Below, in pieces: positions 136-12,753 of a DNA stretch of 64,000 nt (position 1 is its first letter; each line of letters opens with the position of its first letter). A model generated the notes under the pieces. The model had not been told where the DNA came from, searched no databases, and saw nothing but the letters and a program-made list of their open reading frames with translations. A program made the translations under genes and the position numbers. The DNA lies in the IMG/VR virus record IMGVR_UViG_3300044641_009805, positions 62,001 to 126,000 of that record; one strand, written 5' to 3'.

Positions 136-142
136 TGGCCAT

Positions 143-249: not shown

Positions 250-1092
250 ATGGACACGCAAGAGACGCTTCAACGGGCAGCTCAGCTATTGCGAGTAGCT
301 GACGCACTCATCATCACGGCTGGAGCAGGAATGGGGGTGGATAGCGGTCTGCCCGATTTCCGAGGAGATGAAGGTTTCTGGAACGCCTATCCGGCGTACA
401 AGCACCTTGGTCTCACCTTCTCCGACATGGCCAACCCGAGGTGGTTTGAGGATAACCCGGCGTTGGCATGGGGATTCTATGGTCACCGGCTCAACCTGTA
501 CCGAGCGACCCAACCTCACGCAGGCTTCGACGTTCTTAAGCGTCTTGCTCGAGGCATGAAGCATGGTGCCTTCGTCTTCACGTCTAACGTGGATGGTGCC
601 TTCCAGAAGGCTGGTTTCGACCCTGATCGTATCGTGGAATGCCATGGATCCATCCATCACGTCCAGTGTACAAAGGGATGTGGCATCGGCATTCTGCCTG
701 CAGAACGTGTTAAGATCGACGTGGATTCCAAGACGTTTGAGGCCCAGAGCCCGCTACCCGCCTGCCCGCGCTGCGGAGAGCTCTTGAGGCCAAACATCCT
801 GATGTTTGGCGATCCGGGATGGAATTTCTCTCGTGCCGATGAGCAAGACGAGAGGATGACGGAGTGGGTCCGGACCTTAGCAGATCGTCATGTCGCAACC
901 GTTGTCATCGAGTTGGGCGCAGGCAAACACATCCCCAGCGTGCGGGCGAAGAGTTCTTTGTTGTCAAACAAACTCAATGCTCCACTCATTCGCATCAATA
1001 CTCGAGATTCCGATGGTTTCCCCAATACGTTGTCGTTGCCGATGAAGGCAAAGGAGGCTCTCATCGAACTGGAAATCTTGTCAAAATCTTAA
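250..1092 (+). CDS. Sir2/CobB-family NAD-dependent deacylase
   Basis: GAGMGVDSGLPDFRG, TSNVDG, ECHGS, two Cys pairs, RPNILMFGD, ELGAG sirtuin motifs. Confidence 0.92.
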   Translation: MDTQETLQRAAQLLRVADALIITAGAGMGVDSGLPDFRGDEGFWNAYPAYKHLGLTFSDMANPRWFEDNPALAWGFYGHRLNLYRATQPHAGFDVLKRLARGMKHGAFVFTSNVDGAFQKAGFDPDRIVECHGSIHHVQCTKGCGIGILPAERVKIDVDSKTFEAQSPLPACPRCGELLRPNILMFGDPGWNFSRADEQDERMTEWVRTLADRHVATVVIELGAGKHIPSVRAKSSLLSNKLNAPLIRINTRDSDGFPNTLSLPMKAKEALIELEILSKS

Positions 1093-1183
1093 CACCACGC
1101 GGTGCAAACCTTAGACCCATCGTGATATACTGATTTCAACGCTGGCCACTAACCACAACCTCTTGACCTTGAAAGAAAAAGAA

Positions 1184-1375
1184 ATGAGCAACGAGAACAG
1201 CAACATCAGCACGGACACCTGCGACGACTGCGGACGACATGGCCCCGGGACACGTTACGTGCAGGACGACTCGACGACATACTTCATCTGCATGTCGTGT
1301 GGGCCAAAGCAATTCGAAAAGACCGCACGTCGGGACATCGACTCATGGCTGGCAGGAGGTGACTTCGGGGGATGA
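1184..1375 (+). CDS. Small Zn-finger-like hypothetical protein
   Basis: CDDC...CMSC; ATG at 1184 downstream of promoter copy 1103. Confidence 0.65.
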   Translation: MSNENSNISTDTCDDCGRHGPGTRYVQDDSTTYFICMSCGPKQFEKTARRDIDSWLAGGDFGG

Positions 1376-1626
1376 GCTGGAATTACCGAGTTGTCCGCAA
1401 GATCCTCTCTGGTGAAGGATACACCACAACTCAGTACGGAATCCATGAGGTCTACTACGATGACGATCACGTACCGACTTCATGTACCGTCAACCCTGTC
1501 ACCCCTTATGGTGAGTCCGAGGACGAGTTGGCCCAAGACGTGCGGCATTACGCCTCGGCCTTGGAGAAGCCGGTTCTTGATTACGATTCGATCGGTGTAA
1601 AGTCAGAGTCGAACGTGGTAGAGTAG
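1372..1626 (+). CDS. Phage hypothetical protein (WNYRV...IHEVYY type)
   Basis: ATGA overlap with the upstream stop; similar to 2579-2839. Confidence 0.75.
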   Translation: MSWNYRVVRKILSGEGYTTTQYGIHEVYYDDDHVPTSCTVNPVTPYGESEDELAQDVRHYASALEKPVLDYDSIGVKSESNVVE

Positions 1627-1630
1627 AACC

Positions 1631-1765
1631 ATGAAGAACAAGAGGAAGCAAAACCCTATCGCCGTGGCCATGACTCTTCGACACGCCACGACGACAACCC
1701 GTATGAAGGATCGTCGTAACCGGCGCCCGAAGGACGCCCGCCACAAGGAGGACTGGTACAAGTAG
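1631..1765 (+). CDS. 44-aa basic peptide, leaderless (not in ORF track)
   Basis: ATG 6 nt after TAGAGT box; MKNKRKQNPIAVAMTLRHATTTTRMKDRRNRRPKDARHKEDWYK. Confidence 0.75.
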   Translation: MKNKRKQNPIAVAMTLRHATTTTRMKDRRNRRPKDARHKEDWYK

Positions 1766-1782
1766 ACCCAACGGGTTTACCA

Positions 1783-2082
1783 TTGGCGCAGCAGAGATAC
1801 ATTGCGGCAATGGCACGAAAGAAGAAGCAAGAGGCACAAGATAAGCAAGCCTCGATAATCGAGATTCAAATACCGGAAGCAAAGATGGTTCCTGCAAATC
1901 AAGTGGTGCCTGGACAGGTCGTCAAAATTCCAGGCGGTGAGTTTCACAAGGTCGTATCTGTGGATCCCATCCTCGACCCGTCTCACCCTCAGCTCTGGGG
2001 CAATGAAGTCATTGCCAGGGTACAAGATGGCGGGGGAACGAAGCTGGTGATCCTGAAGGGACGGGTCGAACTAGCGGCTTGA
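1783..2082 (+). CDS. Hypothetical protein
   Basis: ORF fills the gap co-directionally; start uncertain. Confidence 0.55.
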   Translation: MAQQRYIAAMARKKKQEAQDKQASIIEIQIPEAKMVPANQVVPGQVVKIPGGEFHKVVSVDPILDPSHPQLWGNEVIARVQDGGGTKLVILKGRVELAA

Positions 2083-2093
2083 TCCTGACACCC

Positions 2094-2172
2094 GGATGAC
2101 CCAGGAGAGGTTTTTAGCAAATCATGGAAGGTTACCAAGGGGTGGCTTTTCGTAACCTCTCCTGGGTCATCC
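2094..2172. repeat. 79-bp palindromic element, copy 1
   Basis: GGATGACCCAGGAGAGG-N45-CCTCTCCTGGGTCATCC with GGTTACC (2130-2136) on the dyad axis. Confidence 0.95.
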
Positions 2173-2214
2173 TCAGGTAGTGTAAAGTCTCAAGGAAAGT
2201 GATATATTAAGACC

Positions 2215-2493
2215 ATGACCGAGGTTCTTGAGTCGATTCCGATTGATCCCATCGTAGAACACCCGACGGATGACATCGCAGCTGGGCCTCTACTTGAGAT
2301 CATGTTCGAAGGAGTTTGGATCCTGGCAGAGGAGGACGTGTTCGGGTGTTGGACTGGGTTGCGGAGGAAGAACGGCGAAGAGATCCATGGGTCGATCTAT
2401 CCTCTCGGGGGGAAGACGTTCTACACAGGTTCTCGGGTCTGCGGGTGCAAGGCATGTCAGGAACATGTGGAGGCGAAGTTCAAGAAGAACTGA
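2215..2493 (+). CDS. Hypothetical protein, leaderless
   Basis: ATG 6 nt after TATATT box; C-terminal CGCKAC. Confidence 0.75.
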   Translation: MTEVLESIPIDPIVEHPTDDIAAGPLLEIMFEGVWILAEEDVFGCWTGLRRKNGEEIHGSIYPLGGKTFYTGSRVCGCKACQEHVEAKFKKN

Positions 2494-2495
2494 TC

Positions 2496-2582
2496 ATGGA
2501 TGAGATGACATTTGGCGACAAAGTTCTGGCTGTTCTCACCATCGGCATCGTGCTGATGGTCTTCGCGATGGAGTTGAAATGA
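2496..2582 (+). CDS. 28-aa single-TM peptide
   Basis: MDEMTFGDKVLAVLTIGIVLMVFAMELK; tightly coupled to both neighbours. Confidence 0.55.
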   Translation: MDEMTFGDKVLAVLTIGIVLMVFAMELK

Positions 2583-2839
2583 AGTCAGACCAACGCATCG
2601 TGAGGCAGATCCTTCCATCAGGTGCCACCTACGATGGTATCTATGAGGTCTACTATGATGAGGAAGGTAGACCTACATCCAGGGCCACTCAACTGTCTAC
2701 TCTCCTCGCCCCAACAACAAAGGCTCTTGTCATAGGACTGAGCGACATGAGACGGGCTTTTGATCGACCTATCTTGCTCGAGGTGAACGATGAACAAGGA
2801 AGATTCGTAGAGATATCTACACAAGGAGACATGACATGA
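2579..2839 (+). CDS. Hypothetical protein, paralog of 1372-1626
   Basis: YDGIYEVYYDEEGRPT vs YGIHEVYYDDDHVPT; AFDRPIL vs ALEKPVL. Confidence 0.7.
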   Translation: MKSDQRIVRQILPSGATYDGIYEVYYDEEGRPTSRATQLSTLLAPTTKALVIGLSDMRRAFDRPILLEVNDEQGRFVEISTQGDMT

Positions 2840-3057
2840 CGACATTCTACAACCAAGAAAAAGCAGCGCTGCTCCAGGCTTTCGTTGCAATCCTCAATGA
2901 TGCAGAGGCCATCCTAGACAAGATCGAAGCCCTTGACATCACGCACAAAGGAGAACCTGATCACGATCATCTGGCTCTGAACGACCTGGTGGCCGACGCC
3001 ATCGAACTCGCGGAGGGGCTACGCGACGCCGCAGACAGCGTCAAAGAAGGAATCTAA
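2836..3057 (+). CDS. Hypothetical helical protein
   Basis: AGGAG SD and ATGA overlap. Confidence 0.7.
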   Translation: MTTFYNQEKAALLQAFVAILNDAEAILDKIEALDITHKGEPDHDHLALNDLVADAIELAEGLRDAADSVKEGI

Positions 3058-3065
3058 CCAAGCGG

Positions 3066-3284
3066 TTGGAAGATACCTTAGACCTGCACGGGGTGTCTCA
3101 TGAGGATGCCTCTGAAATGGTCCACAGGTTCATCAATGATCATTGGGTAGAAGGGTGGACCCTTCACGTCATCACGGGAAACTCTACGAAGATGAAGTCC
3201 ATCGTTCAATCCGTCCTGAACCTGTATCAGGTCGACTGGATTGATGACGAATGGAACGCTGGCAGCATCAAGATTTTTACATAG
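3066..3284 (+). CDS. Stand-alone Smr (small MutS-related) domain protein
   Basis: LDLHGVS.EDA...LHVITGNS...NAGSI Smr signature; TTG start. Confidence 0.8.
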   Translation: MEDTLDLHGVSHEDASEMVHRFINDHWVEGWTLHVITGNSTKMKSIVQSVLNLYQVDWIDDEWNAGSIKIFT

Positions 3285-3324
3285 CTTGTTGTAAAGTCAC
3301 TGAAACAAATGATAGGGTATAATC

Positions 3325-3537
3325 ATGCGGATCTTGCCGACAGACAACGTCGACCTGACGTACTACTCTTCTTCACATCTTAGGTCGATCGGCGAAGCTC
3401 TTGTCGAACGTTTGAAGAAGGGTCAGGTAAGCCTGGTCGGGCTAGATCAAGCTGCTCTAGCGGCTGCAAAATCAGGGATGCCGACACTCCGCGATGTTCT
3501 CAGGTTGAAGGAGGCCTGCAGGCTTGCGGGGGTGTGA
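3325..3537 (+). CDS. Hypothetical protein, leaderless
   Basis: ATG 6 nt after TAGGGT box of copy 3290. Confidence 0.7.
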   Translation: MRILPTDNVDLTYYSSSHLRSIGEALVERLKKGQVSLVGLDQAALAAAKSGMPTLRDVLRLKEACRLAGV

Positions 3538-3803
3538 CAGTGGCGTGGATTGATGACCATAGGATCCTGTTCATCTTCAGAACGGCCATGGAATCATTGA
3601 AGAGAGGAGATGAGGCCTCAGCTCAGTTCTATCTGAAACAAATCCCCCCAGAACAAATGGAGTATGTTTGGGGTCTTGTATCCCAGGCGACGGGTCGACC
3701 CATCCATGAACTTCGTAAACCTTGGTGGAAACGCCACATCAAACTGTTCGTTTCGGGGTTTGTGATTCTTGGAACCATTCTTTACTATACCACACGAGGG
3801 TAA
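3534..3803 (+). CDS. Hypothetical protein with C-terminal TM
   Basis: GTGA overlap; hydrophobic LFVSGFVILGTILYY. Confidence 0.65.
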   Translation: MTVAWIDDHRILFIFRTAMESLKRGDEASAQFYLKQIPPEQMEYVWGLVSQATGRPIHELRKPWWKRHIKLFVSGFVILGTILYYTTRG

Positions 3804-4025
3804 ATGAACAACGATGAATTCAATGACTTGATCATGCGACTCCGCGACTCCTCCACCCCACCACATCTGCGTGAGGAGGTCATCATGGCACTCAAACACC
3901 AACGTCAGATGTTAGAGGATATTTACCTAGGGGCGCGCAACGGACTTCACGTAGCACCAGAGCACCTTGCAGGGGTCGCCCTCGGTAAAACAGGTTACGG
4001 GGGATTGGGTGACATGGGATTCTGA
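3804..4025 (+). CDS. Hypothetical protein
   Basis: Abuts upstream stop; GAGG SD. Confidence 0.65.
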   Translation: MNNDEFNDLIMRLRDSSTPPHLREEVIMALKHQRQMLEDIYLGARNGLHVAPEHLAGVALGKTGYGGLGDMGF

Positions 4026-4026
4026 T

Positions 4027-4251
4027 ATGCAAACGATGACGTCATGCTGGGTGATTCGCACCAAAAATGGTGTTCGAGGTGGACAAGAATTCGTCTACTG
4101 GAACCTTAATGAGGGTTGGGTCTACGATCCAATGTTAGCGACTCGTTATGCAGACGAAGCGGAGGCCTGCGGGTCGATTGCAAACTATGCTGCGAACGGG
4201 TTGTTTCCAGAAAATGGTGTGTCCGCTGTGCAAATCTTCACGACGTCGTGA
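4027..4251 (+). CDS. Hypothetical protein
   Basis: ATG 1 nt after upstream stop; 3' end contains promoter copy 4229. Confidence 0.6.
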   Translation: MQTMTSCWVIRTKNGVRGGQEFVYWNLNEGWVYDPMLATRYADEAEACGSIANYAANGLFPENGVSAVQIFTTS

Positions 4252-4263
4252 TACAGTACGAAT

Positions 4264-4485
4264 GGGTCCATAAATGTGGTTGCGATGGTGACATCGATTC
4301 TGGTTCGAATCCAGATGGATCCCCTGGGATACAGGTCGTGGTAACTTGTAATCCTGACCAAACAATCGTTATGATTGTGGTCATTAGCGGCATGAAGGGC
4401 TGCCACGACAGGAAGCTGCCGATTAAGTAGGTGAACGGAGGACCTTCTTCCTCCATAGTAACTAACCCCGGGTTTCGGAGGAAAC
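4264..4485 (+). ncRNA. Candidate structured RNA: 5' tRNA-like module (4264-4323) plus multi-hairpin domain
   Basis: Starts exactly 6 nt after TACAGT box; acceptor GGGTCCA/TGGATCC, T-arm TCTGG-TTCGAAT-CCAGA, no D-stem, GNRA-capped CGATG/CATCG hairpin, then four more hairpins. Confidence 0.7.
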
Positions 4486-4486
4486 A

Positions 4487-4831
4487 GTGTACAACGATTC
4501 GATTTTCAAGCTAAAGTTGCAGATCGAATTTCTGAATAAGGGTGTCGTACCCCTTGCGTGGAGGCAAGAAAGTGGAGCTCCGACCCACTTCGACATCAAC
4601 AAGATCCTTGCCGAGTTCCCCCCGGACGAGGCCCGCGCGATGAAGCGCAAGTTCCGCAAGCTCTGGAGGAAGCTGGTTGAGCACAGCCTGAAGCGTCCAG
4701 GAAAAAACTCCAGGCGCCGGCTTCATAACATCGAACATGGCGAGGCGATCCCATCCCGCAAGGCGAAGAACTTCAGAAAGGGCGAGGTCCTCAATGCCAT
4801 TCACCGCAAAGTTGCCAAGGCACCCAAATGA
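4487..4831 (+). CDS. Basic hypothetical protein
   Basis: GGAGG SD at 4477-4481, GTG start; MKRKFRKLWRK. Confidence 0.75.
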   Translation: MYNDSIFKLKLQIEFLNKGVVPLAWRQESGAPTHFDINKILAEFPPDEARAMKRKFRKLWRKLVEHSLKRPGKNSRRRLHNIEHGEAIPSRKAKNFRKGEVLNAIHRKVAKAPK

Positions 4832-5109
4832 AGCTGACAGGAACCATGTGGCAGGTGAAGCCCTACGCTCCATCGATATGGGGTAACATCACGGATCATC
4901 CAGCGACGTACGTTGACGTCATCAACAACCGGGTGACCATGATGGGATGCATCCGGCCAGGAGACACGATCCTCATCATCTCTGAGAGAACGAGGTTCTC
5001 CGGTCTGGACAAATACCTCGAGGCTGTCAAAGTGGCCACTCCTGTCCCTGGGTGGTGCAATGCCACATATTTCACCAGCGACTCCTTGTGGATGGAAAGA
5101 ATCGCATAG
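4828..5109 (+). CDS. Hypothetical protein
   Basis: ATGA overlap; stop abuts promoter copy 5111. Confidence 0.65.
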   Translation: MKLTGTMWQVKPYAPSIWGNITDHPATYVDVINNRVTMMGCIRPGDTILIISERTRFSGLDKYLEAVKVATPVPGWCNATYFTSDSLWMERIA

Positions 5110-5146
5110 GTGCAAATCTGCACCTGAACAAGATATAAACAGCATG

Positions 5147-5317
5147 ATGACTCGTGAGGAAATGAAGGCCGCGGCCGACTTCTTGAGGAAGTACGCCACT
5201 GCCGTGGAGACGAAGTTGTACTGGAACATGTCGACCAGTGAGGCGAAGGCTGAAATCAAGGAGGCCAAACATCTAGCAACGTTATTGGACGAGGCAGCAG
5301 AAAAAGAGTGCAACTAG
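5147..5317 (+). CDS. Small hypothetical protein
   Basis: ATG 5144 or 5147 just after TATAAA box. Confidence 0.65.
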   Translation: MTREEMKAAADFLRKYATAVETKLYWNMSTSEAKAEIKEAKHLATLLDEAAEKECN

Positions 5318-5351
5318 TTACACGCACGTGTACACGGGAGCGGTTTTTTGA

Positions 5352-5738
5352 ATGAAGCGATCTGACACCGAGATGTTGCTGATGGCCGCCGGTGCAGGCC
5401 TGCGTAAGTCCGACCTACGGGCATTCAGACTTGGTGCAGTAGGCATCCGGAACGATGGTATCCTCGTATCGGCATCCAATGGTCCTGCCCCTTTCCCCCA
5501 TCCTGATGCCCATGCTGAGGCTCGGCTGACGATGAAGCTGACTCCCGGGTCTGAGATCTGGGTGGCACGTGTTCGGAAGGATGGAACCCTTGGTATCGCC
5601 CGGCCTTGTCCCCGGTGCATGGTGCGTATCCGGGCCGCCGGGGTATCTCGAGTGGCCTACACGATTTCAGATATAGAACATGGAGTGATCCATTTGCACT
5701 CCGGTGGTGAAGTAATGAAGCCGATGAGAGGGCGATGA
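5352..5738 (+). CDS. Zn-dependent cytidine/dCMP deaminase-fold protein
   Basis: HAE ... PCPRC deaminase motif. Confidence 0.85.
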   Translation: MKRSDTEMLLMAAGAGLRKSDLRAFRLGAVGIRNDGILVSASNGPAPFPHPDAHAEARLTMKLTPGSEIWVARVRKDGTLGIARPCPRCMVRIRAAGVSRVAYTISDIEHGVIHLHSGGEVMKPMRGR

Positions 5739-5741
5739 AGC

Positions 5742-5933
5742 ATGCGTGTCAAGAGAATGAAAGAAGGCAAACGTGTGACGCATGAGATGTCGCACAGGGA
5801 GAAGCTTCACTACGATCCTCACCTCGACGTGTACTGGATCGTGACGTTGTTGCCTGACGGGACGCAACACATCGGGTCGCCGTTCGCCACGAGCGCCTTG
5901 GATACCCTGTACAACGCATCTTGGGGGTCGTGA
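5742..5933 (+). CDS. Hypothetical protein
   Basis: Co-directional ORF; start uncertain. Confidence 0.5.
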   Translation: MRVKRMKEGKRVTHEMSHREKLHYDPHLDVYWIVTLLPDGTQHIGSPFATSALDTLYNASWGS

Positions 5934-5987
5934 AAAAAAAGCGCGGGAGCAGTGCAAAGTTTGCGGAAGAAAGTGTATACTGGGACC

Positions 5988-6176
5988 ATGGACCACGTCA
6001 AGAAGCTCACGGTCGTCGACGCAGACAACTCCCGCGAGTACCGCATCGAGGTGGAAGAGGGCCCGCTGCCTTACACGACGCGGATCGTGTTCGGGCCAAG
6101 CTTCTCGATCACCCTCCAGAACGAGGACGTCGCGACGCTCGCTCAGCTTCTCATGCAGGCTTCTTCGGACGTCTGA
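5988..6176 (+). CDS. Hypothetical protein, leaderless
   Basis: ATG 6 nt after TATACT (5976-5981). Confidence 0.75.
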   Translation: MDHVKKLTVVDADNSREYRIEVEEGPLPYTTRIVFGPSFSITLQNEDVATLAQLLMQASSDV

Positions 6177-6230
6177 AAAAAGTTCTCCACCCGGTGCAAA
6201 GTTCCACTTCGAAAATGTATATATAGGATC

Positions 6231-6593
6231 ATGAACAGCATCAAGTACGTGGCCATCCTCAACGACACCATCAAGACCCTCCGACTCAATGTCGATCCGG
6301 CGCAGCTGAACCACCTGCGTGCCGCCGCCGCGGAGATCGACCAACTCCGTGGAGAGGTCGCCGACCTCGCCTTCGGCCTGTCGAAACGGCTCGCCGCCTA
6401 CGCGGCCGACATCGACGCTGGCCGCACCAGCGTCGAGCTACCTACCGCGTCGATGAAGGGTGCGAACGACCTTCTCTTCATGCAAAAGAAGAACGACGCC
6501 CTCCTGCGAAAAGCCGAGGGCTTCCCGCTCCTCCTCACCGGGGCTCTCGGTTTCGAAGCCGAGAAGAAGTTCTTCGAACTCATCCGGGGCTGA
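6231..6593 (+). CDS. Hypothetical protein, paralog of 13595-13957
   Basis: Promoter copy 6195; AAAEIDQLR...KRLAAYAADIDAGRT...FFELIRG. Confidence 0.8.
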   Translation: MNSIKYVAILNDTIKTLRLNVDPAQLNHLRAAAAEIDQLRGEVADLAFGLSKRLAAYAADIDAGRTSVELPTASMKGANDLLFMQKKNDALLRKAEGFPLLLTGALGFEAEKKFFELIRG

Positions 6594-6647
6594 AAAAAAG
6601 TTCTCCCCTCGGTGCAAAGTTCTACCTCGAAAAGGTATACTGAAGCC

Positions 6648-6920
6648 ATGAACACCTTCCCGATCATCCTCGACGGTTCGAAGTTCGACTGGTACAACGC
6701 CTCCGCCGCGCACGGCATGGGATCGATCAGCGATCATCCTGGCTTCCCGCAGTCCGGCTGGGCACCGGGTCAGGTCGCGGTCCGCAGCCACCGTACGGGC
6801 AAGGTGGTGGCCTTCAAGTTCGTCGAGATCGCCAACGACGGCGAGGGCAACGTCAGCCTCAACTACGAGGGCACTCTCCCCGACGGCCGCTACTGCGCAC
6901 TTTCTCTCGCGGTCGGCTGA
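6648..6920 (+). CDS. Hypothetical protein, leaderless
   Basis: ATG 6 nt after TATACT (6636-6641). Confidence 0.75.
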   Translation: MNTFPIILDGSKFDWYNASAAHGMGSISDHPGFPQSGWAPGQVAVRSHRTGKVVAFKFVEIANDGEGNVSLNYEGTLPDGRYCALSLAVG

Positions 6921-6961
6921 GGGCAGTGCAAAGTCAACCTCAGGTAAGGTAAGGTAGAACC

Positions 6962-7192
6962 ATGAAGCGAAACTCCTCTCCCAAGTCGAAGGTTCTCGAG
7001 CTGGCTTCCTTCTGCGTCTCGGAAGGCACACCCCTCGAGGTCCGCAGCACCCGCATCAAGGGGCGGTTCGGTGGCGACTTCCTCGTCGAGGTCGACGCGG
7101 GCACTCAGGTCTTGGCCCGAGCCCGCCACCGCAACTGGCGCACGGCCTACAAGCTTCTCGGCATCGAACTGTCACGCCGGGGTGTCGCCTGA
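6962..7192 (+). CDS. Hypothetical protein, leaderless
   Basis: ATG 6 nt after TAAGGT. Confidence 0.75.
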   Translation: MKRNSSPKSKVLELASFCVSEGTPLEVRSTRIKGRFGGDFLVEVDAGTQVLARARHRNWRTAYKLLGIELSRRGVA

Positions 7193-7228
7193 GTGCAAAG
7201 CGCACGGTGAATGAGGTAAGATAGAACC

Positions 7229-7960
7229 ATGGACGCCACACCCCGGATCGAAGCCCTCCGCACCGCTAAGGCCATCATCGGCTCTCACGGTGTGGTTGCG
7301 CACATGAACAAGTACAACCGAGAAGTCCTCGCTCGGGAGGTGACCGAGGGATCGACGGGGATGCGGTGCGACTTCAACCTGGACCCCGCTCGCAGCGCCT
7401 GGCACGAGTCCAACCCGTCGGTCACGTTGGTGGTCGCCTACAATGCGGACCCGAAGGGGGCACAGCTCAATGATGAAGGTGCCATGGTGCTAGAAAACTA
7501 CCTACGTATCGCCGTGGGGACTTCAGGCGGCGACATGGACCTAGAGACGCTGAAGCAGCGGGAAAGCATGGTCTCGATGGTTGCCATGCTGGGAGAAATG
7601 CTGACAACGACGTTGCCCCAGAAGATCACGTTGACCATGGAGTCACCCGCTCAGGTGGTCGAGAGGACACAACGCCAGCACGAGCAGTTCGTTGGCAAGC
7701 AAATCTACGACAACCTCGGTGAGGCGGCCTTCAAGGGCCTCCGCGTCGATGGCTCAGGCCGATTCGTACGCCTCACTTCCACCTACGCTTCTGTGGCCGG
7801 AAAGTACCCGGATTCTGGGACCTACCGGTTCCGTCACGTCCGTCGAGTTGACCGTAGGGGTTGCCCCAAGGAAGTCGCCAACTATTCGATCCGGGTGTTC
7901 GGGTGTGGAGACGGTAGCCTCCCTCCTTCGGTCGCGATTCATCGCATCAAGGCAGTGTAA
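7229..7960 (+). CDS. Hypothetical protein, leaderless
   Basis: ATG 6 nt after TAAGAT; its TAA lies inside the next TGTAAA box. Confidence 0.8.
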   Translation: MDATPRIEALRTAKAIIGSHGVVAHMNKYNREVLAREVTEGSTGMRCDFNLDPARSAWHESNPSVTLVVAYNADPKGAQLNDEGAMVLENYLRIAVGTSGGDMDLETLKQRESMVSMVAMLGEMLTTTLPQKITLTMESPAQVVERTQRQHEQFVGKQIYDNLGEAAFKGLRVDGSGRFVRLTSTYASVAGKYPDSGTYRFRHVRRVDRRGCPKEVANYSIRVFGCGDGSLPPSVAIHRIKAV

Positions 7961-7990
7961 AGTTCCTCAGAGAGGTGATAGAGTAGAACC

Positions 7991-8017
7991 ATGGAAACGA
8001 TCAAGATCGGCATCTGA
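7991..8017 (+). CDS. 8-aa leaderless upstream ORF METIKIGI
   Basis: ATG at the canonical position 6 nt after TAGAGT; TGA at 8015-8017. Confidence 0.45.
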   Translation: METIKIGI

Positions 8018-8055
8018 CCCAATCCACCCGCCAACCTTCCGCCCAGGAGAACTAC

Positions 8056-8451
8056 ATGTCGACTCGCTCTTTCATCGGAATCCAGAATCTCGACGGCACG
8101 GTCACCGGCGTCTACTGCCACCATGATGGATATCTCGACGGCGTCGGAGCGACCCTCAAGGCCCACTACACGACGGTCCGCCAGGTGCTCGACCTCGTGG
8201 CGCTCGGCTCGTTGTCCTCTCTCCATGAGGACCTCGACTACACGCAGGCCTACCATCGTGACCGTGGTGATGACCTCGACATCTCCACCTACGACTCCCC
8301 TGTTGACATCAGCTTCGACGACGGAGGCTACGAGTTCGTCTACCTCTTCCGGCCGTCGGATGAGCGAGGATCGACCTATAGCTGGCACTACGCAGACCGT
8401 GAGGTCTTCGGCAAAGGTCCCGAGTTCAAGCCCCTCGCCTTCGCGGTGTAA
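8056..8451 (+). CDS. Conserved phage hypothetical protein (STRS.IG...YCHHDGY type)
   Basis: AGGAG SD; motif I recognise from other phages, function unknown. Confidence 0.8.
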   Translation: MSTRSFIGIQNLDGTVTGVYCHHDGYLDGVGATLKAHYTTVRQVLDLVALGSLSSLHEDLDYTQAYHRDRGDDLDISTYDSPVDISFDDGGYEFVYLFRPSDERGSTYSWHYADREVFGKGPEFKPLAFAV

Positions 8452-8481
8452 AGTCAACCCCCAACAAGATAAGGTAACAAC

Positions 8482-8724
8482 ATGACACGACGAGTTACGA
8501 ACAAGCTTCTCGAGATGATGGAAGAGGGCGCCTTGGATGCCGAGGTGCTGGTGAGGGCCTGCCTGACCTTCATGTCGGAGGCCGACGTGGCCGAGATGGC
8601 CGTGGGTGAGGGGTTCCTCGAGGAGGAGGACGCAGAGATCGACGAGGACGAAGATGAGGATGAGGTAGGCGAGGATGATGAGGAGGAAGAGCCCCTCTCA
8701 ACCTTCGGGGTGGACGACGACTGA
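8482..8724 (+). CDS. Highly acidic small protein, leaderless
   Basis: C-terminal D/E tract EEEDAEIDEDEDEDEVGEDDEEEE. Confidence 0.8.
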   Translation: MTRRVTNKLLEMMEEGALDAEVLVRACLTFMSEADVAEMAVGEGFLEEEDAEIDEDEDEDEVGEDDEEEEPLSTFGVDDD

Positions 8725-8776
8725 AAAAGTGCGGGCGGCGGTGCAAAGTCCTGTGTGATCGTGGTAGATTGGAACC

Positions 8777-9520
8777 ATGCCGATCATCAAGAAGAGCTAC
8801 GCCTACGGTCCCGGCCCCTCCACGTCGGAGGTGTACTTCCAGCACCGCGTCCTGCGGATCGAGAAGACCACGGAGACCCGCAACTGGTCGGACACGCTCG
8901 ACTACTCGGACCACCGCTCGACGGAGTGCACCTGGGCCCTCGTGTGGCTCGGTACCCGCGGCGTTCCAGCCCGCGATGCCCACTACGCCGGCGGTCGCAC
9001 CGTCGCCTACTTCGACGCCCTCAAGTGGGACGCCGACAAGATCCGCGACCTCGAGGTCCACGAGCAGTTTGCCTGGGTGGATTGCACCAACCTCTTCGTG
9101 GATCGTAACGGCTACTCGCTGGTGCCTTCGGTCGATCCTTTCGACATGCAGCTCCTCCACGGCGGTCCGGAGATGATCGAGGGGCTCGCGGTCTGGGAGG
9201 CCTACCACACGGCTCGGATCGCCCGTGCGGAGGCGGAACGGATGGCCAAGGTCGCCGAAGCTGCTGCCCAGGTCGCCGCCGAGAAGGCGAAGAGGGATGC
9301 CCGCCAAGCAAAGCGAGATGCCAAGCTCCAGGCCGAGAAGGCGGTGGCTGAGGGTCAGTTGGCCCGGATCCCCGCCAAGGGCACCACGGTCACGGTCGAT
9401 GGGTTCACCGGCAAGGTCTTCTGGATCGGTGTCTCCAAGTACCGCGGCAAGTGGAATGCCCGGGCAGGGGTGAAGGACCCCAAAGGGAACGTCCAGTGGG
9501 TCCCGGCAGATAAGTTCTGA
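8777..9520 (+). CDS. Hypothetical protein with Ala/Lys coiled coil and C-terminal beta domain
   Basis: ATG 6 nt after TAGATT; GC3-rich codon pattern. Confidence 0.8.
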   Translation: MPIIKKSYAYGPGPSTSEVYFQHRVLRIEKTTETRNWSDTLDYSDHRSTECTWALVWLGTRGVPARDAHYAGGRTVAYFDALKWDADKIRDLEVHEQFAWVDCTNLFVDRNGYSLVPSVDPFDMQLLHGGPEMIEGLAVWEAYHTARIARAEAERMAKVAEAAAQVAAEKAKRDARQAKRDAKLQAEKAVAEGQLARIPAKGTTVTVDGFTGKVFWIGVSKYRGKWNARAGVKDPKGNVQWVPADKF

Positions 9521-9537
9521 CCCTCGTCCCACCCCCA

Positions 9538-9616
9538 GGATGACCCAGGAGAGGTTCCTGAAACTGGGGGTGGGGTAACCTAGGTCGAATTGTCCTAGGC
9601 CTCTCCTGGGTCATCC
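9538..9616. repeat. 79-bp palindromic element, copy 2
   Basis: Same 17-bp arms (extendable to 21 bp, 9534-9620), N45, GGTAACC (9574-9580) on the dyad axis. Confidence 0.95.
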
Positions 9617-9682
9617 TGGGTGACCTGAGAAAAAGTGCCCATGTCGGTGCAAAGTTCCACCGGGAAAGGGTATACTGGGACC

Positions 9683-9769
9683 ATGAAGAACGCCGCCGCT
9701 GACATCCTCGGAGCCATCGTCACCGTCGCCACCACGGCCTTCGCGGCCTGGTGGATGATGGCCGCCTGA
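9683..9769 (+). CDS. 28-aa hydrophobic peptide, leaderless (not in ORF track)
   Basis: MKNAAADILGAIVTVATTAFAAWWMMAA; own promoter copy 9648. Confidence 0.7.
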   Translation: MKNAAADILGAIVTVATTAFAAWWMMAA

Positions 9770-9809
9770 ACCCGGTGCAAAGTCACCCATGACAAGATAT
9801 ATACTTGTC

Positions 9810-10136
9810 ATGAAACTGACCACGAAACAGCTAAGAAGCTTGATCAACGAAGTCCTTGAAGAAGAAGGAGTGACACCGGCCATGACCACCGACCAACTCA
9901 AGGAGATCGCGGCGGAACTCACCAAGGCGGAGAAGGCGGCCTTCCTCAACGCCCGGCCTTACCCCCCGGATGGTCGGGTCCAACTGCCTTCGGGCCGGGT
10001 CCTCGACGTCGGCTCTTGGGAAGCCGCCATGGAACTCAACACCCTCGTCATGTTGCCGCAGAAGAAGATCGGAACAGGCCGAGGTGGTCTGAAGGGTCGC
10101 CCGGCCTGGCTGAAAAAAGCGCTCGGCTACTACTGA
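9810..10136 (+). CDS. Hypothetical protein with MKLT..QLR.LI.E N-terminal motif
   Basis: MKLTTKQLRSLINEVLEEE; promoter copy 9776. Confidence 0.8.
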   Translation: MKLTTKQLRSLINEVLEEEGVTPAMTTDQLKEIAAELTKAEKAAFLNARPYPPDGRVQLPSGRVLDVGSWEAAMELNTLVMLPQKKIGTGRGGLKGRPAWLKKALGYY

Positions 10137-10175
10137 GCGGTGCAAAGTCAACCTCGAACAGGATAAGGTAGAACC

Positions 10176-10397
10176 ATGGACAACATCAAGATCTTCGTGG
10201 TGCAGCAGGGTGCAATGTCCTATTCCAACGTCGACGAGGTCACCTACGTGTTCCTCAACGAGGCGGACGCTCGGGTCAAGTACGCGTACCTCCTCGAGAA
10301 CCGGGTGGTCGAGTGCGACTCTTACGACAGGACCTGGACTTCCCTCCACGCGGTGACTCCTGGCGACGAGGTGTCGCAGGACAACAAGATCGCCTGA
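10176..10397 (+). CDS. Hypothetical protein, leaderless
   Basis: Promoter copy 10141. Confidence 0.75.
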   Translation: MDNIKIFVVQQGAMSYSNVDEVTYVFLNEADARVKYAYLLENRVVECDSYDRTWTSLHAVTPGDEVSQDNKIA

Positions 10398-10433
10398 GTG
10401 CAAAGTCAACCTCGAACAGGATAAGGTAGAACC

Positions 10434-10751
10434 ATGAACATCATCGAGTACGTCTCCGGCGGCCGTAGGTACCGGGCCACCCTCGTCCCTGGGAAGCACA
10501 TCATCGTGGAGTGCTTCCGGGATGATCAGTTCGTCTCCATGCGGAAGTTCGAGGTCGGCGATGTGGCCGAGTACGACTCCTTCAACCTCCGCTACACCGC
10601 GCCCATCGTCTCCATCGGCAAGTCCACGGTCACGTTCAATGTGTACGACAGCAAGAGGCGCCTCAAGGCTGAGAACTTCGCCTGGCGCAATTGGAACTTC
10701 AACGCCGAGGAGATCGCCCGTCGGAACGCGGAGACGAGCCAGCACATCTGA
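10434..10751 (+). CDS. Hypothetical protein, leaderless
   Basis: Promoter copy 10399 (identical to 10141). Confidence 0.8.
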   Translation: MNIIEYVSGGRRYRATLVPGKHIIVECFRDDQFVSMRKFEVGDVAEYDSFNLRYTAPIVSIGKSTVTFNVYDSKRRLKAENFAWRNWNFNAEEIARRNAETSQHI

Positions 10752-10792
10752 ACCCGGTGCAAAGTTCGACCGTGATAGGGTATACTAGGACC

Positions 10793-11035
10793 ATGAACAA
10801 GTTCGATGCTTTCGCGGCCAAGGCGAAGATCCTCGGGGAGATGCTGGAGACCGTCGGCAAGCTGCGGGACTCCGACCTGGAGAAGCTCGTGGCGCCGATG
10901 GAAGGCATGACGGTGTGGTCCCACGACGATGTTGAGTCGCTGACTGACTCGATCAACCACCTCTTCGAGGAGCTGATGATGCTCCAGGAAGAACTCCAGT
11001 CCTTCACCAGCCCGGCTGAGAGGTCGAGTGGCTGA
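10793..11035 (+). CDS. Hypothetical protein, leaderless
   Basis: ATG 6 nt after TATACT (10781-10786). Confidence 0.75.
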   Translation: MNKFDAFAAKAKILGEMLETVGKLRDSDLEKLVAPMEGMTVWSHDDVESLTDSINHLFEELMMLQEELQSFTSPAERSSG

Positions 11036-11039
11036 CCCA

Positions 11040-11117
11040 GGATGACCCAGGAGAGGCCCTGAGAATTCCCGGTGGGGTAACCTCCGCCTCGAACCTCCGG
11101 CCTCTCCTGGGTCATCC
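11040..11117. repeat. 78-bp palindromic element, copy 3
   Basis: Same 17-bp arms, N44, GGTAACC at 11076-11082. Confidence 0.95.
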
Positions 11118-11174
11118 TCGAGGGAGTGCAAGGGGACGGTGCAAAGTTCCACCGGAGAGGGATAAGATGGACCC

Positions 11175-11705
11175 ATGACAGTGATATCGTGGATCGCCCT
11201 CCTCGTCGCCATAGTGGCCCTTGCTGACTCGCAAGAGACTCGAGCACGCCTCAAGACACTCAGCCGCATCCCCGGTCCACGAGGGCTCCGAGGTCTACGT
11301 GGGGCGCCAGGACCGAGAGGAGAGGCCGGAGAGGTAGGCCCATGTGGCCCACCAGGACCCCAAGGTGAAACAGGTCCCCAAGGAACCCCAGGCATTCCTG
11401 GGCCAAAGGGAGACCCAGGAGACGGTGGGCCAATGGGACCCCAAGGCCCGACAGGGGAAGCAGGACCCAAGGGTGAGACCGGTCTAACGGGTGACCAGGG
11501 TCCAAGCGGCCCAACAGGTCCCCAGGGTCCTCGAGGTGAGGCAGGACCGACCGGACCCCAAGGTGATATGGGACCACCTGGCCCACGGGGAGAAGTGGGA
11601 CCTAGAGGTCCCCAGGGCTTCAAGGGTGAGTCCAGCGGACCGGCCGAACGGGAACTCCTCGCCCATTGGGCCCACGAGGCACTGAAGCCCCGAGGCGAAG
11701 AATGA
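11175..11705 (+). CDS. Membrane-anchored collagen-like protein
   Basis: N-terminal hydrophobic [14 protein letters not shown] followed by a long uninterrupted Gly-X-Y tract. Confidence 0.85.
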
Positions 11706-11751
11706 CACGAGATCGGTGCAAAGTCACCCCTGAATAGGGTATACTGGGACC

Positions 11752-11949
11752 GTGAAGATCATCTACCTGTTGTTCAGCGACGTGACCTTCGGGACCCACG
11801 AGCACGGCTTCATCCCGCGCAAAGTCGTTCAGGATCCGGACGACGAGGACGCCCGCTACGAGCGCCACCTGAAGTCCAAGGGCATCAATGCCCGTGTGTA
11901 CGACGGCAAGGTGAAGCTCCTTGAGCCCGGGGAAAAGTTCACGATCTGA
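11752..11949 (+). CDS. Hypothetical protein, leaderless (GTG)
   Basis: GTG 6 nt after TATACT. Confidence 0.7.
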   Translation: MKIIYLLFSDVTFGTHEHGFIPRKVVQDPDDEDARYERHLKSKGINARVYDGKVKLLEPGEKFTI

Positions 11950-11985
11950 GTGCAAAGTTCAACCTCGAAAGGATATACTAGGATC

Positions 11986-12213
11986 ATGAACAACGCAATC
12001 CAACCCGGCGATCGAGTCATCCTCTCCCCCGTCAACGGCCTCGGGTGCAGTGCCTTCCTCGTCCTGGAGGTCGACCCCAACGTGCATCCGACCCACCGCC
12101 TCTACGTCGAAGGCCGGAATGGCCAGCGCTGGTGGGCCCGGATCGAGGGAGCGCGGATCCTCCCGGAGGAACCTGAGGGGAACTTCACCTCGAGCCGTCA
12201 CGGCGATTGGTGA
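11986..12213 (+). CDS. Hypothetical protein, leaderless
   Basis: ATG 6 nt after TATACT. Confidence 0.75.
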   Translation: MNNAIQPGDRVILSPVNGLGCSAFLVLEVDPNVHPTHRLYVEGRNGQRWWARIEGARILPEEPEGNFTSSRHGDW

Positions 12214-12267
12214 GAAAAAGCCCTCCATCCGGTGCAAAGTCAACCCCGAACGAGGTAAGGTAGAACC

Positions 12268-12462
12268 ATGGACACCGCATTCGAAGTCTTCATCTCCGAC
12301 ACCATCCATGGCACCTCCGACCGTCGGGCATACAAGACCCGGGAGCGGGCCGTGGCTCGGTACGAGGAGCTGACGCGGAACCACAAACGCAATGGCCACT
12401 CCGCCGTGATCCTCCGCCAGGGCAAAGCACAGATCTTCCCGGCACCGATCTGCGGCCGCTGA
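12268..12462 (+). CDS. Hypothetical protein, leaderless
   Basis: ATG 6 nt after TAAGGT. Confidence 0.75.
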   Translation: MDTAFEVFISDTIHGTSDRRAYKTRERAVARYEELTRNHKRNGHSAVILRQGKAQIFPAPICGR

Positions 12463-12498
12463 GTGCAAAGTTCACAGAGGAAAGGATATACTAGGACC

Positions 12499-12714: not shown

Positions 12715-12753
12715 CCGGTGCAAAGTTCGACTCCGAAAGGATATACTAAGACC

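What the first reader, a model, noticed from the sequence alone, without database searches (positions are those of the whole stretch)
2094..11117. Three 78-79 bp elements with invariant 17-bp inverted arms and GGT(A/T)ACC on the dyad axis
Seen at 2094-2172, 9538-9616 and 11040-11117: GGATGACCCAGGAGAGG-N45/45/44-CCTCTCCTGGGTCATCC. The arms are identical in all copies and the interior largely diverges, yet GGTTACC (copy 1) or GGTAACC (copies 2, 3) sits at the centre (2133, 9577, about 11079). All three are intergenic, between a stop codon and a promoter repeat. Fixed arm spacing plus a conserved central core is not what a terminator needs. Inference: a multi-part protein-binding or recombination site (arm sites plus central crossover; copy 1 core inverted relative to 2 and 3), a REPIN/MITE-like element, or a DNA entry/segregation signal. 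No cognate recombinase is visible in the window.
Basis: seen in the sequence. Interest (0 to 1): 0.8.

Follow-up and report, generated by a model that had tools for sequence, protein, structure and literature searches.

The report
Conserved intergenic hairpins in phage gene array
Three 78-79-base palindromic elements in an uncultured freshwater T4-like phage belong to a new, conserved family of long hairpin-forming spacers that sit between a gene's stop codon and the next gene's promoter; they most likely mark transcript boundaries, and nothing supports a recombination or mobile-element role.

Summary
The 17-nt arm occurs six times as three inverted pairs (0.07 expected), with 45/45/44-nt interiors and GGTWACC on the dyad. 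Related lake-phage contigs yield 22 distinct variants at six syntenic sites.

- Length is fixed at 77-79 nt.
- The 19-bp stem is 97.8% paired, and seven positions carry double (compensatory) changes.
- An asymmetric core (GGRRGGTWACCWAGG) points the same way as the genes at sites B, C and D, and probably at A. Copy 1 is therefore not inverted.
- The central heptamer is not invariant.
- Arms and core are more conserved than the flanking genes. The rest of the interior drifts.
- No copy occurs in 185,579 bacterial genomes, no recombinase is in the window, and no Rfam family matches.
- Relatives show no inversion or deletion between copies.

The setting is a GC-rich array of about 26 promoter cassettes placed exactly 36 nt before each ATG. 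Relatives shuffle genes at these cassettes, as described for PeSL cassettes of T4-type phages.

Best reading (confidence about 0.45): a transcribed boundary hairpin (termination, processing or insulation). The features that do not fit are the missing U-tract, the fixed spacing, the conserved centre, and a diverged untranscribed copy outside the window. These keep a protein-recognised DNA or hairpin site alive as a rival.

The parts
2094..2172 (+). Element copy 1 (site A), 79 nt. Arms 2094-2110 and 2156-2172. The stem extends to 19 bp (2094-2112 / 2154-2172).
   Evidence: I7; sense RNA MFE -55.9 kcal/mol, z -7.3. Orthologues are in L001, L003, L010, L014, L045 and L047.
2128..2140 (+). Core of copy 1, AAGGTTACCAAGG. 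GGTTACC lies at 2130-2136 on the dyad.
   Evidence: alignment columns 45-57; G47, G48, C52 and C53 invariant.
9538..9616 (+). Element copy 2 (site B), 79 nt. Arms 9538-9554 and 9600-9616. The palindrome extends to 21 bp (9534-9554 / 9600-9620).
   Evidence: I5; -58.2 kcal/mol. Orthologues include the arm-variant copies L007:5913 and L047:2999 and the 'E' copies L001:7897 and L028:3906.
9572..9584 (+). Core of copy 2, GGGGTAACCTAGG. GGTAACC lies at 9574-9580.
11040..11117 (+). Element copy 3 (site C), 78 nt. Arms 11040-11056 and 11101-11117. The stem extends to 20 bp.
   Evidence: I6; -65.8 kcal/mol. Orthologues are in L047, L050, L054 and L055.
11074..11086 (+). Core of copy 3, GGGGTAACCTCCG. 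GGTAACC lies at 11076-11082.
11030..11041 (+). Partial tandem duplicate of the arm start (GGCTGACCCAGG). It carries the TGA stop of the upstream gene.
   Evidence: The same arrangement is seen at the site B 'E' copies L001:7897 and L028:3906 in relatives.
5915..5935 (+). Empty site D (tcttgggggtcgtgaaaaaaaa). Relatives carry a 79-nt family member here, flanked by a 7-nt TCCTGGG repeat whose right copy overlaps the arm end.
   Evidence: ('between -4'). The upstream gene end is a diverged allele, so the element's absence sits inside a replaced segment.
2180..2217 (+). Promoter-like cassette 7 nt downstream of copy 1 (GTGTAAAGT...ATATAT...ATG).
9647..9685 (+). Promoter-like cassette 30 nt downstream of copy 2, preceded by TGAGAAAAAG.
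11139..11177 (+). Promoter-like cassette 21 nt downstream of copy 3.

Best explanation
The elements are cis-acting boundary hairpins of a promoter-cassette gene array in a distant T4-like phage. Transcripts from upstream promoters read through the stop codon of the preceding gene and copy the element into RNA. There it folds into a very stable 19-21-bp stem capped by a 41-45-nt interior that presents the conserved purine-rich core.

The hairpin would then define or protect the 3' end of the upstream message, or be cut as double-stranded RNA (RNase III-type). Either way it insulates the next promoter-driven unit. A sequence-specific factor probably reads the stem and core.

Together with the A-tract and promoter that follow, the element forms a composite stem-loop/promoter cassette like the PeSLs of T4-type phages. 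Such cassettes also serve as homology patches for module shuffling.

Shown: the family exists; the stem covaries; the core is polar; the position is fixed; the element is confined to this phage clade; genes are shuffled at the cassettes. Inferred: transcription of the element, termination or processing, and the existence of a binding factor.
For: - Position: the element lies 0-17 nt after a stop codon and 7-31 nt before the next promoter cassette at sites A-F in every genome examined.
- Stem: 19 pairs, 97.8% of cells paired, 7 pairs with changes on both sides, 0/500 shuffles reach this, and the signal collapses when partners are slid.
- Arm variants coexist within one genome. L007 has GGATGCCCTTGGGGAGG at site B and the consensus at site D. 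L047 has three arm versions.
- Polarity: the asymmetric core lies on the gene strand in all 42 copies that contain the motif, from loci of both orientations. A leave-one-type-out matrix favours the forward orientation by 20-50 bits for B and D, and in 6/6 but weakly for A.
- The sense strand folds better than the antisense strand in 18/22 variants, by a mean of 4.5 kcal/mol.
- Single-sided arm changes are G.U-compatible on the sense strand.
- No other terminator-like structure exists in the 16-kb array.
- The one copy that is not downstream of any ORF or repeat promoter (site G, L070:639-715) is the most degenerate and evolves like its flanks.
- Array and context match PeSL architecture and behaviour (PMC2839356, PMC4122927): a T4-type capsid and portal, and homology blocks between relatives that end at the cassettes.
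Against: - There is no U-tract after the stem; only one conserved U follows. Classical intrinsic termination is therefore unlikely.
- Arms are 85-99% identical between orthologues whose flanking genes are 69-83% identical, and the core is 92-100% identical. A plain hairpin does not need that.
- Interior length is fixed (45, rarely 44) although its sequence drifts to 56% identity.
- The invariant core bases are the symmetric G47, G48 / C52, C53 exactly on the dyad. Linear spacing and symmetry are more natural for duplex DNA.
- No inner secondary structure is shared between types.
- Site G keeps the central GGTTACC although it is not transcribed from the repeat promoters.
- Only 3 of about 26 cassettes in the window carry the element.
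- The G.U asymmetry consists only of C>T changes on the non-template strand and could be a mutation bias. Paired arm changes could arise by template switching within a quasi-palindrome rather than by selection.
- The RNA runs found were assembled contigs and gave no transcript ends.
Confidence: 0.45

Rival explanations
1. It is a protein-recognised DNA site. One version is duplex DNA with two inverted arm sites and a dyad-centred GGTNACC about three helical turns from each arm centre. The other is a hairpin folded from the transiently single-stranded sense strand. A phage-encoded or host factor would bind it to regulate the adjacent promoters, organise or insulate the heavily transcribed array (for example a topoisomerase or nucleoid-protein site), or prime or load replication proteins.
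For: - Sequence conservation of arms and core exceeds that of the flanking genes.
- Length is strictly fixed, and the only invariant interior bases are symmetric about the dyad.
- Arm centre to core centre is 31 bp.
- Two discrete arm types recur at different sites: alpha GGATGACCCAGG and beta GGATGCCCTTGG.
- Site G lies between divergent promoter arrays, 28 nt upstream of a promoter and outside any predicted transcript, yet keeps its arms and the central heptamer.
- Every copy lies within 31 nt upstream of a promoter cassette.
- A phage sigma-like protein is encoded at 16902-17735.
- The single-stranded DNA fold is also significantly stable.
Against: - Alpha and beta arms, and other paired variants, coexist in one genome while complementarity is always kept. 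One dimer reading both half-sites does not predict that.
- Spacing to the promoter falls in three classes (7, 21 and 28-31 nt) that are not in helical phase.
- A 45-bp spacer makes cruciform extrusion from duplex DNA unlikely.
- The motif never occurs alone near the other roughly 23 promoters.
- No candidate DNA-binding gene travels with the element.
- Site G evolves no more slowly than its flanks.
Confidence: 0.25
2. They are relics of a non-autonomous mobile element (MITE/REPIN-like). It once inserted near the 3' ends of genes, brought its own stop codons (the TGA in the arm), and is now immobile.
For: - The element has terminal inverted repeats and a uniform size, with several copies per genome.
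- One empty site in the window contrasts with occupied sites in relatives, with a 7-nt TCCTGGG repeat at the junctions. A remnant of the gene's original end (TGGGGGTCGTGA) lies after the element.
- Many copies are followed by a relic 'TGA + A-tract', like the junctions that lack the element.
- At sites C and E a partial arm duplication carries the upstream stop codon.
Against: - All copies are at the same six syntenic sites in all relatives, with no lineage-specific insertion.
- Orientation is fixed at all transcribed sites.
- Paralogous interiors are far more diverged than the arms, the opposite of a recent burst.
- No transposase or RAYT is in the window.
- No member occurs elsewhere in the 278-kb source contig beyond the four copies, in IMG/VR outside this clade, or in bacterial genomes.
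- The single empty site lies within a recombinationally replaced segment. Its junction repeat overlaps the arm, as expected for a palindrome-stimulated deletion.
Confidence: 0.12
3. It is a site-specific recombination site (arm sites plus a central crossover) used for inversion or deletion between copies.
For: - Inverted arms surround a dyad-centred near-palindromic heptamer.
- Gene order in the array is shuffled among relatives.
- In L055 a site C element is followed by the site B downstream cassette.
Against: - The supposed inverted core of copy 1 is not supported.
- The heptamer varies and loses palindromy in three lineages.
- The L055 junction lies outside the element, after the right arm.
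- Most synteny breaks fall at promoter cassettes, not at the elements.
- No hybrid interiors were seen among 22 variants.
- No recombinase is in the window.
- The arms are separated by 45 bp rather than by a short overlap region.
Confidence: 0.04
4. It is a trans-acting small RNA or decoy. The hairpin is excised from early transcripts and its conserved core and stem bind or titrate a host factor, for example a defence or RNA-processing protein.
For: - The core sequence is conserved and polar, sits at the apex of a long stem, and does not depend on local pairing.
- The element is located in an array of small orphan genes typical of host-takeover regions.
Against: - No Rfam family matches.
- No complementary target or standalone motif occurs in the window.
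- No similar sequence occurs in bacterial genomes.
- There is no evidence of expression.
- No own promoter lies in front of any copy.
Confidence: 0.1

Closest known systems
PeSL (promoter-early stem-loop) cassettes of T4-type phages (Arbiol et al. 2010, PMC2839356; Comeau et al. 2014, PMC4122927)
   Same: - A stem-loop sits between the upstream stop codon and an A/T-rich stretch plus promoter.
- The cassettes are repeated through a hyperplastic region of small orphan genes in a T4-type myovirus.
- They coincide with indels, replacements and gene-order changes between relatives.
   Different: - The stem is 17-21 bp with a 41-45-nt interior, and its sequence is nearly invariant. PeSL stem-loops are short and have no conserved loop motif.
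- Only 3 of about 26 cassettes carry the element.
- No U-run follows it.
- The promoter is not sigma-70 consensus, and there is no Shine-Dalgarno sequence: the ATG lies 6 nt after the -10-like box.
Intercistronic RNase III processing hairpins of T7-group phages, and 3' stabiliser hairpins such as REP elements (from established knowledge, not tested here)
   Same: Long, stable, sequence-related hairpins lie between co-transcribed genes. They act on the RNA and have a fixed orientation. A perfect stem of 19 bp or more is a plausible double-stranded-RNA substrate.
   Different: No cleavage or 3'-end data exist here. T7 sites have an internal loop and small apical loops. None has a dyad-centred conserved motif or a fixed 79-nt length.
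Bacterial MITEs and REPINs (for example Correia elements, REP doublets)
   Same: Short elements with terminal inverted repeats lie in intergenic 3' regions, can fold as RNA hairpins, and occur in several copies. One empty site exists.
   Different: Sites are syntenic and orientation is fixed. There is no transposase or RAYT and no GTAG-type REP signature. Paralogous interiors are diverged. The element is absent from bacterial genomes.
Integron attC sites and other folded single-strand recombination sites
   Same: Imperfect palindromes of 57-141 bp lie directly 3' of cassette ORFs. They are polar, and the stem is conserved more than the centre.
   Different: No R/L box consensus (GTTRRRY), no extrahelical bases and no unpaired central spacer. 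The stem is perfect. No integrase is present. The element does not follow every cassette.

Membership tests
PeSL cassette (T4-type phages) | A stem-loop lies between the upstream stop codon and the promoter of the next gene, preceded or followed by an A/T-rich stretch | tested here: met
   Stops are 4-17 nt upstream. Promoter cassettes are 7, 30 and 21 nt downstream. An A-tract (GAGAAAAAG) follows copy 2 and most copies in relatives.
PeSL cassette (T4-type phages) | Strong sigma-70-like promoter (-35/N17/-10) followed by a Shine-Dalgarno sequence and ATG | tested here: not met
   The repeat is GTGCAAAGT-N17-TATACT/TAAGGT with exactly 36 nt (35 in three cassettes) from its start to the ATG and no Shine-Dalgarno sequence. 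The sigma-70 consensus scan finds none of them.
PeSL cassette (T4-type phages) | Located in hyperplastic regions of a T4-type genome and associated with indels and replacements between relatives | tested here: met
   Gp23-type capsid, T4-type portal and terminase. Homology blocks between relatives end at the cassettes. The site D segment is replaced. L055 and contig joints support this.
PeSL cassette (T4-type phages) | The stem-loop is a short terminator hairpin present at most cassettes and acts as a transcription terminator | tested here: not met
   The stem is 17-21 bp with a 41-45-nt interior, found at 3 of about 26 cassettes, with no U-run. Terminator activity itself cannot be tested with these tools.
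Intrinsic (Rho-independent) terminator | G+C-rich hairpin immediately followed by a U-tract | tested here: not met
   The hairpin is present, but the tails are UCAGGUAG, UGGGUGAC and UCGAGGGA. The terminator scan does not report the elements.
MITE / REPIN | Terminal inverted repeats with target-site duplication | tested here: inconclusive
   TIR-like arms are present. The only junction comparison (site D) shows a 7-nt TCCTGGG repeat whose right copy overlaps the arm, which is equally compatible with a deletion. No consistent duplication is seen at sites A, B or C.
MITE / REPIN | Copies at non-orthologous, lineage-specific sites in either orientation, and a cognate transposase or RAYT somewhere | tested here: not met
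   Six syntenic sites are shared by relatives. Orientation is fixed. No transposase is in the window. The rest of the 278-kb genome was not examined for one.
Site-specific recombination site (att/dif/attC-like) | Recombinase-binding arms flank a short conserved crossover region, with a cognate recombinase and recombinant products | tested here: not met
   The arms are 45 bp apart. The central heptamer is variable (GGTTGCC, GGCTACC, GGTATCC). No recombinase is in the window. No inversion, deletion or hybrid interior appears among relatives.
Any described RNA family (Rfam 15) | Match to a covariance model at or above the gathering score | tested here: not met
   Only two tRNAs reach gathering score in the window. 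Permissive scans of copies 1 and 2 give only sub-threshold generic miRNA-hairpin hits.
RNase III-type intercistronic processing site | About two turns of double-stranded RNA in a co-transcribed intergenic region, cleaved on both strands | not testable with these tools
   The stem of 19-21 bp is predicted and covaries. Cleavage needs RNA end mapping, and the RNA runs available were assembled contigs only.

The most novel reading that the evidence does not exclude
The elements are recognition sites of an undescribed sequence-specific hairpin-binding system. A phage (or host) protein would read a 17-bp stem of one of two specificities (alpha or beta arms) together with a GGTNACC motif held at a fixed distance on the dyad. 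The substrate would be folded sense-strand DNA or RNA. The sites would delimit expression modules of a leaderless early-gene array, acting as a new kind of boundary or punctuation signal with its own reader, rather than as a passive hairpin.
Probability: 0.2. Interest if true: 0.7.

Novelty: new variant of a known kind. Interest (0 to 1): 0.45.

Why it matters
If the reading is right, this is a well-defined, easily recognisable punctuation element for a clade of uncultured freshwater T4-like jumbo phages. It extends the PeSL idea (composite stem-loop/promoter cassettes that both regulate and shuffle small early genes) to a very distant branch with leaderless genes.

The element is unusually constrained: invariant arms, a fixed 79-nt length and a dyad-centred core. 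It therefore probably has a specific reader, which could be found by pull-down. The 22 natural variants already amount to a mutational series for testing RNA-level against DNA-level function.

It is not evidence for a new recombination system.

Tried and rejected
- Megablast of 1500-12000 against 50,697 phage records gave no match.
- Rfam scans at gathering and permissive thresholds found no family.
- Transcript evidence failed. Four 'RNA' runs held related sequence, but only as assembled contigs of relatives. Two were flagged as probably DNA, and none gave end information.
- The bacterial/archaeal genome scan returned only unrelated palindromes that share the 10-nt ends by chance or belong to other repeat families, for example in Acidobacteriaceae MAGs.
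- A search for further empty site D alleles in IMG/VR found only the source contig.
- A shared inner secondary structure was looked for. The alignment fold predicted four extra inner pairs that 0-5 of the 22 variants break, but they are not symmetric about the dyad, and local folds differ between site types. I treated them as not a shared structure.
- The core resembles the arm's outer 12-mer (9/12). I estimated this to be only borderline against chance (about 0.05), and it does not covary with the beta arms, so I dropped it.
- From memory, the core and arm resemble the 3' end of 16S rRNA. The covariance scan of the element gave no SSU match, and I did not pursue it.
- Full-text search for the arm and promoter strings found nothing relevant.
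- G.U asymmetry was considered as proof of RNA folding. I downgraded it because all events are C>T on the non-template strand.

Full report
**1. Observation**

The 17-mer GGATGACCCAGGAGAGG occurs exactly six times in the window, as three inverted pairs. The positions are 2094/2156, 9538/9600 and 11040/11101. Dinucleotide-preserving shuffles give 0.07 matches at up to three mismatches. The elements span 2094-2172, 9538-9616 and 11040-11117, with interiors of 45, 45 and 44 nt. GGTTACC or GGTAACC is centred at 2133, 9577 and 11079.

Each element lies 4-17 nt after the stop codon of a plus-strand ORF and 7, 30 or 21 nt before a promoter-like repeat. As single strands they fold into 19-21-bp stems. 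The sense RNA energies are -56 to -66 kcal/mol, with z-scores of -4.2 to -7.3. DNA parameters also give significant folds.

**2. Genomic setting**

The window comes from a distant T4-type myovirus.
- It encodes a Gp23-type capsid protein, a T4-type portal and a large terminase.
- The nearest isolates by portal protein are a Microcystis phage and Flavobacterium phages, at about 40% identity.
- The same sequence is part of a 278-kb IMG/VR contig and is held by many lake-water metagenome runs.

Bases 1-14,000 have a G+C content of 0.51-0.62. The structural region has 0.30-0.39. Independent contigs of relatives span the junction between the two, so this is not an assembly chimera.

The G+C-rich part is an array of small, mostly orphan genes. 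Twenty-six of them are preceded by a cassette of the form GTGCAAAGT-N17-TATACT/TAAGGT. The cassette starts exactly 36 nt before the ATG, or 35 nt in three cases, and there is no Shine-Dalgarno sequence. This suggests leaderless messages. No canonical terminator occurs in the 16-kb region. No recombinase, transposase or partition protein is encoded in the window. The annotated genes include Sir2, a deaminase, UvdE, a sigma-70-family protein, a ligase, PhoH-PIN and ClpP.

**3. The family**

Pattern scans of IMG/VR and JGI metagenomes, followed by a covariance-model search of the fetched loci, gave about 50 copies. These collapse to 22 distinct variants plus a diverged type.

All come from related freshwater phage contigs. 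They sit at six syntenic sites, in the order G, A, D, B (the copies I first called type E are orthologues of B), then C or F.
- The window holds sites A, B and C.
- Site G of the same genome lies outside the window (L070:639-715).
- Site D is empty in the window.

A scan of one genome from each of 185,579 bacterial and archaeal species found no family member. Rfam has no match. The motif strings do not occur in the searchable literature.

**4. Anatomy from the 22 variants**

The alignment is essentially gap-free. Length is 79 nt, or 78 nt at sites C and F.

*Stem.* The stem has 19 pairs and 97.8% of cells are paired. Seven positions show changes on both sides. No shuffle out of 500 reaches these values, and the signal collapses when partners are slid by one column. 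Paired variants include:
- GGATGCCCTTGGGGAGG / CCTCCCCAAGGGCATCC
- GGATGACCTAGG... / ...CCTAGGTCATCC
- GGTTGGCCC... / ...GGGCCAACC
- GGGGAGG / CCTCCCC

Different arm versions coexist within one contig, for example in L007 and L047.

*Interior.* Only the central bases are constrained. G47, G48, C52 and C53 are invariant, and T49, A51 and G57 are nearly so (A2 columns). The conserved core is asymmetric and reads GGRRGGTWACCWAGG. The heptamer itself varies in three lineages (GGTTGCC, GGCTACC, GGTATCC), so neither its sequence nor its palindromy is obligatory. Apart from the arms and these three central pairs, the two halves are not complementary. The local folds predicted for the interior differ between site types.

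*Conservation between orthologues*:

| Segment | Identity |
|---|---|
| Arms | 85-99% |
| Core | 92-100% |
| Rest of interior | 56-90% |
| Flanking sequence | 69-83% |

**5. Polarity**

In all 42 copies that contain the core motif, from loci fetched in either orientation, the core lies on the strand of the promoter cassettes and genes. A position matrix trained without the tested site type favours the forward orientation strongly for B and D (+10 to +30 bits against -6 to -25). It favours forward for all six A variants too, though only weakly for the window copy. Site C variants were not scored in that matrix test because their alignment rows contain a gap; for C the polarity rests on the motif count alone.

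The flanks read the same way in all three copies.

The sense strand folds more stably than the antisense strand in 18 of 22 variants. Single-sided changes in the arms are nearly all G.U-compatible on the sense strand.

Two caveats apply.
- Those single-sided changes are all C>T on the non-template strand. They could reflect a transcription-linked mutation bias.
- Paired changes in a DNA palindrome can arise by template switching without selection for pairing.

**6. Empty site and recombination**

At site D the window reads tcttgggggtcgtgaaaaaaaa (5915-5935). Relatives read tcctgggcATGA-[79-nt element]-tgggggtcgtgagaaaaag at the same place. A 7-nt TCCTGGG repeat is at both junctions, and the right copy overlaps the arm end.

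This could be an insertion scar. It could equally be a deletion stimulated by the palindrome. The second reading gains weight from context: the last 30 nt of the upstream gene in the window are a diverged allele, whereas a close relative is 98.5% identical up to position 5902. The absence therefore sits in a replaced segment.

Across relatives, homology blocks end at the promoter cassettes, near 6612, 6926, 8446, 8741, 9647, 10398, 12718, 12953 and 13559. Contigs of relatives join one cassette to another. In L055 a site C element is followed by the site B downstream cassette, with the junction just after the right arm. No hybrid interiors were found, and no inversion or deletion between copies.

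**7. Site G**

This 77-nt copy has beta-type arms (GGATGCCCTTGG), a one-base bulge, and GGTTACC still exactly central. It lies between leftward and rightward promoter arrays, 28 nt upstream of the first rightward cassette, and it does not follow any ORF. It is therefore not part of any transcript from the repeat promoters.

It evolves about as fast as its flanks (84% against 88% between L010 and L019), and its orientation cannot be decided. This can be read two ways. It may be a relaxed, carried-along copy, which fits an RNA-level role for the other sites. Or it may show that the element works on DNA.

**8. Interpretation**

I favour a transcribed boundary hairpin. It would be part of a composite stem-loop, A-tract and promoter cassette like the PeSLs of T4-type phages. 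In those phages the stem-loops terminate transcription and the cassettes mediate modular shuffling and mini-circle formation (PMC2839356, PMC4122927).

The points in favour are position, covarying stem, polarity, sense-strand stability, the lack of any other terminator, and the shuffling. Because there is no U-tract, processing or 3'-end protection (an RNase III-type substrate) is more likely than classical intrinsic termination.

A passive hairpin does not explain the near-invariant arm sequence, the two recurring arm types, the fixed length, the dyad-centred core, or site G. These features point to a specific reader and keep a protein-bound DNA or folded-strand site as the main rival.

The mobile-element reading rests on a single ambiguous empty site. 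The syntenic positions, fixed orientation and absence from any host genome argue against it. The recombination-site reading is the weakest.

**9. Novelty**

The family is undescribed and restricted to an uncultured phage clade. Its architecture and context place it as a new variant of a known kind, namely intergenic stem-loop/promoter cassettes of T4-type phages, rather than a new class of system.

The element fails several PeSL criteria: no sigma-70 consensus, no Shine-Dalgarno sequence, no short terminator stem, and it is not present at most cassettes. I therefore describe it as working like a PeSL stem-loop, not as a member of that family.

The surrounding array is at least as remarkable as the hairpins. 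It consists of rigidly spaced, apparently leaderless promoter cassettes in a 60% G+C island of a roughly 35% G+C phage.

Noticed in passing
window 214-13597: Twenty-six promoter-like cassettes (GTGCAAAGT-N17-TATACT/TAAGGT) lie exactly 36 nt (35 nt in three cases) before an ATG or GTG, with no Shine-Dalgarno sequence. This looks like an array of apparently leaderless small genes, often preceded by a stop codon plus an A-tract.
   Followed up: partly
window 1-15000 versus 28000-64000: G+C is 0.51-0.62 in the small-gene array and 0.30-0.39 in the structural and replication region of the same phage. Relatives' contigs span the junction, so it is not an assembly chimera.
   Followed up: partly
L070:639-715 (source contig, outside the window); also L003:4291, L010:11029, L014:2659, L019:6269: A fourth, diverged 77-nt copy has beta arms and a central GGTTACC. 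It sits between divergent promoter arrays and does not follow any ORF.
   Followed up: yes
window 5902-6612, 9647, 10398, 12718, 12953, 13559 compared with L001, L007, L010, L028, L047, L055: Gene order and content in the array differ between related phages. Homology blocks end at the promoter cassettes, and assembled contigs of relatives join one cassette to another (for example 9685>10180, 9687>11155, 11134>9645).
   Followed up: partly
window 16902-17735 (+): A phage-encoded sigma-70-family protein has hits to regions 2 and 3 only and no region 4 hit.
   Followed up: no
window 11175-11705 (+): The gene just downstream of copy 3 encodes a protein with a hydrophobic N-terminus and collagen-like G-X-Y repeats. 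Its DNA contains 9-nt periodic repeats (repeat family D5).
   Followed up: no
window 9683-9769 (+): The cassette after copy 2 drives only a 28-codon hydrophobic ORF (MKNAAADILGAIV...). In L070 a leftward cassette drives an 8-codon mini-ORF.
   Followed up: no
window 143-217 (+) and 20717-20789 (+): tRNA-Arg(CCU) ends where the first promoter cassette (214) begins. A tRNA-Glu(UUC) lies at the transition to the low-G+C region.
   Followed up: no
window 2215-5933: A stretch of about 3.7 kb between site A and the empty site D has 13 or so tightly packed small ORFs, lower G+C (0.51-0.53) and only two degenerate cassettes. It looks like one operon-like module bounded by the elements in relatives.
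   Followed up: no
L040, L059, L063, L064 (Acidobacteriaceae MAGs and a soil contig): Unrelated 70-80-nt palindromes of the form (G)AAAATGACCCAGGAC...GTCCTGGGTCATTTTC recur in acidobacterial genomes. They may be a bacterial repeat family of their own.
   Followed up: no
window 24442-26328 (-): The major capsid protein is 628 aa. The best Gp23 stretch covers residues 350-619 (two stretches matched in all), so it may carry a long N-terminal extension.
   Followed up: no
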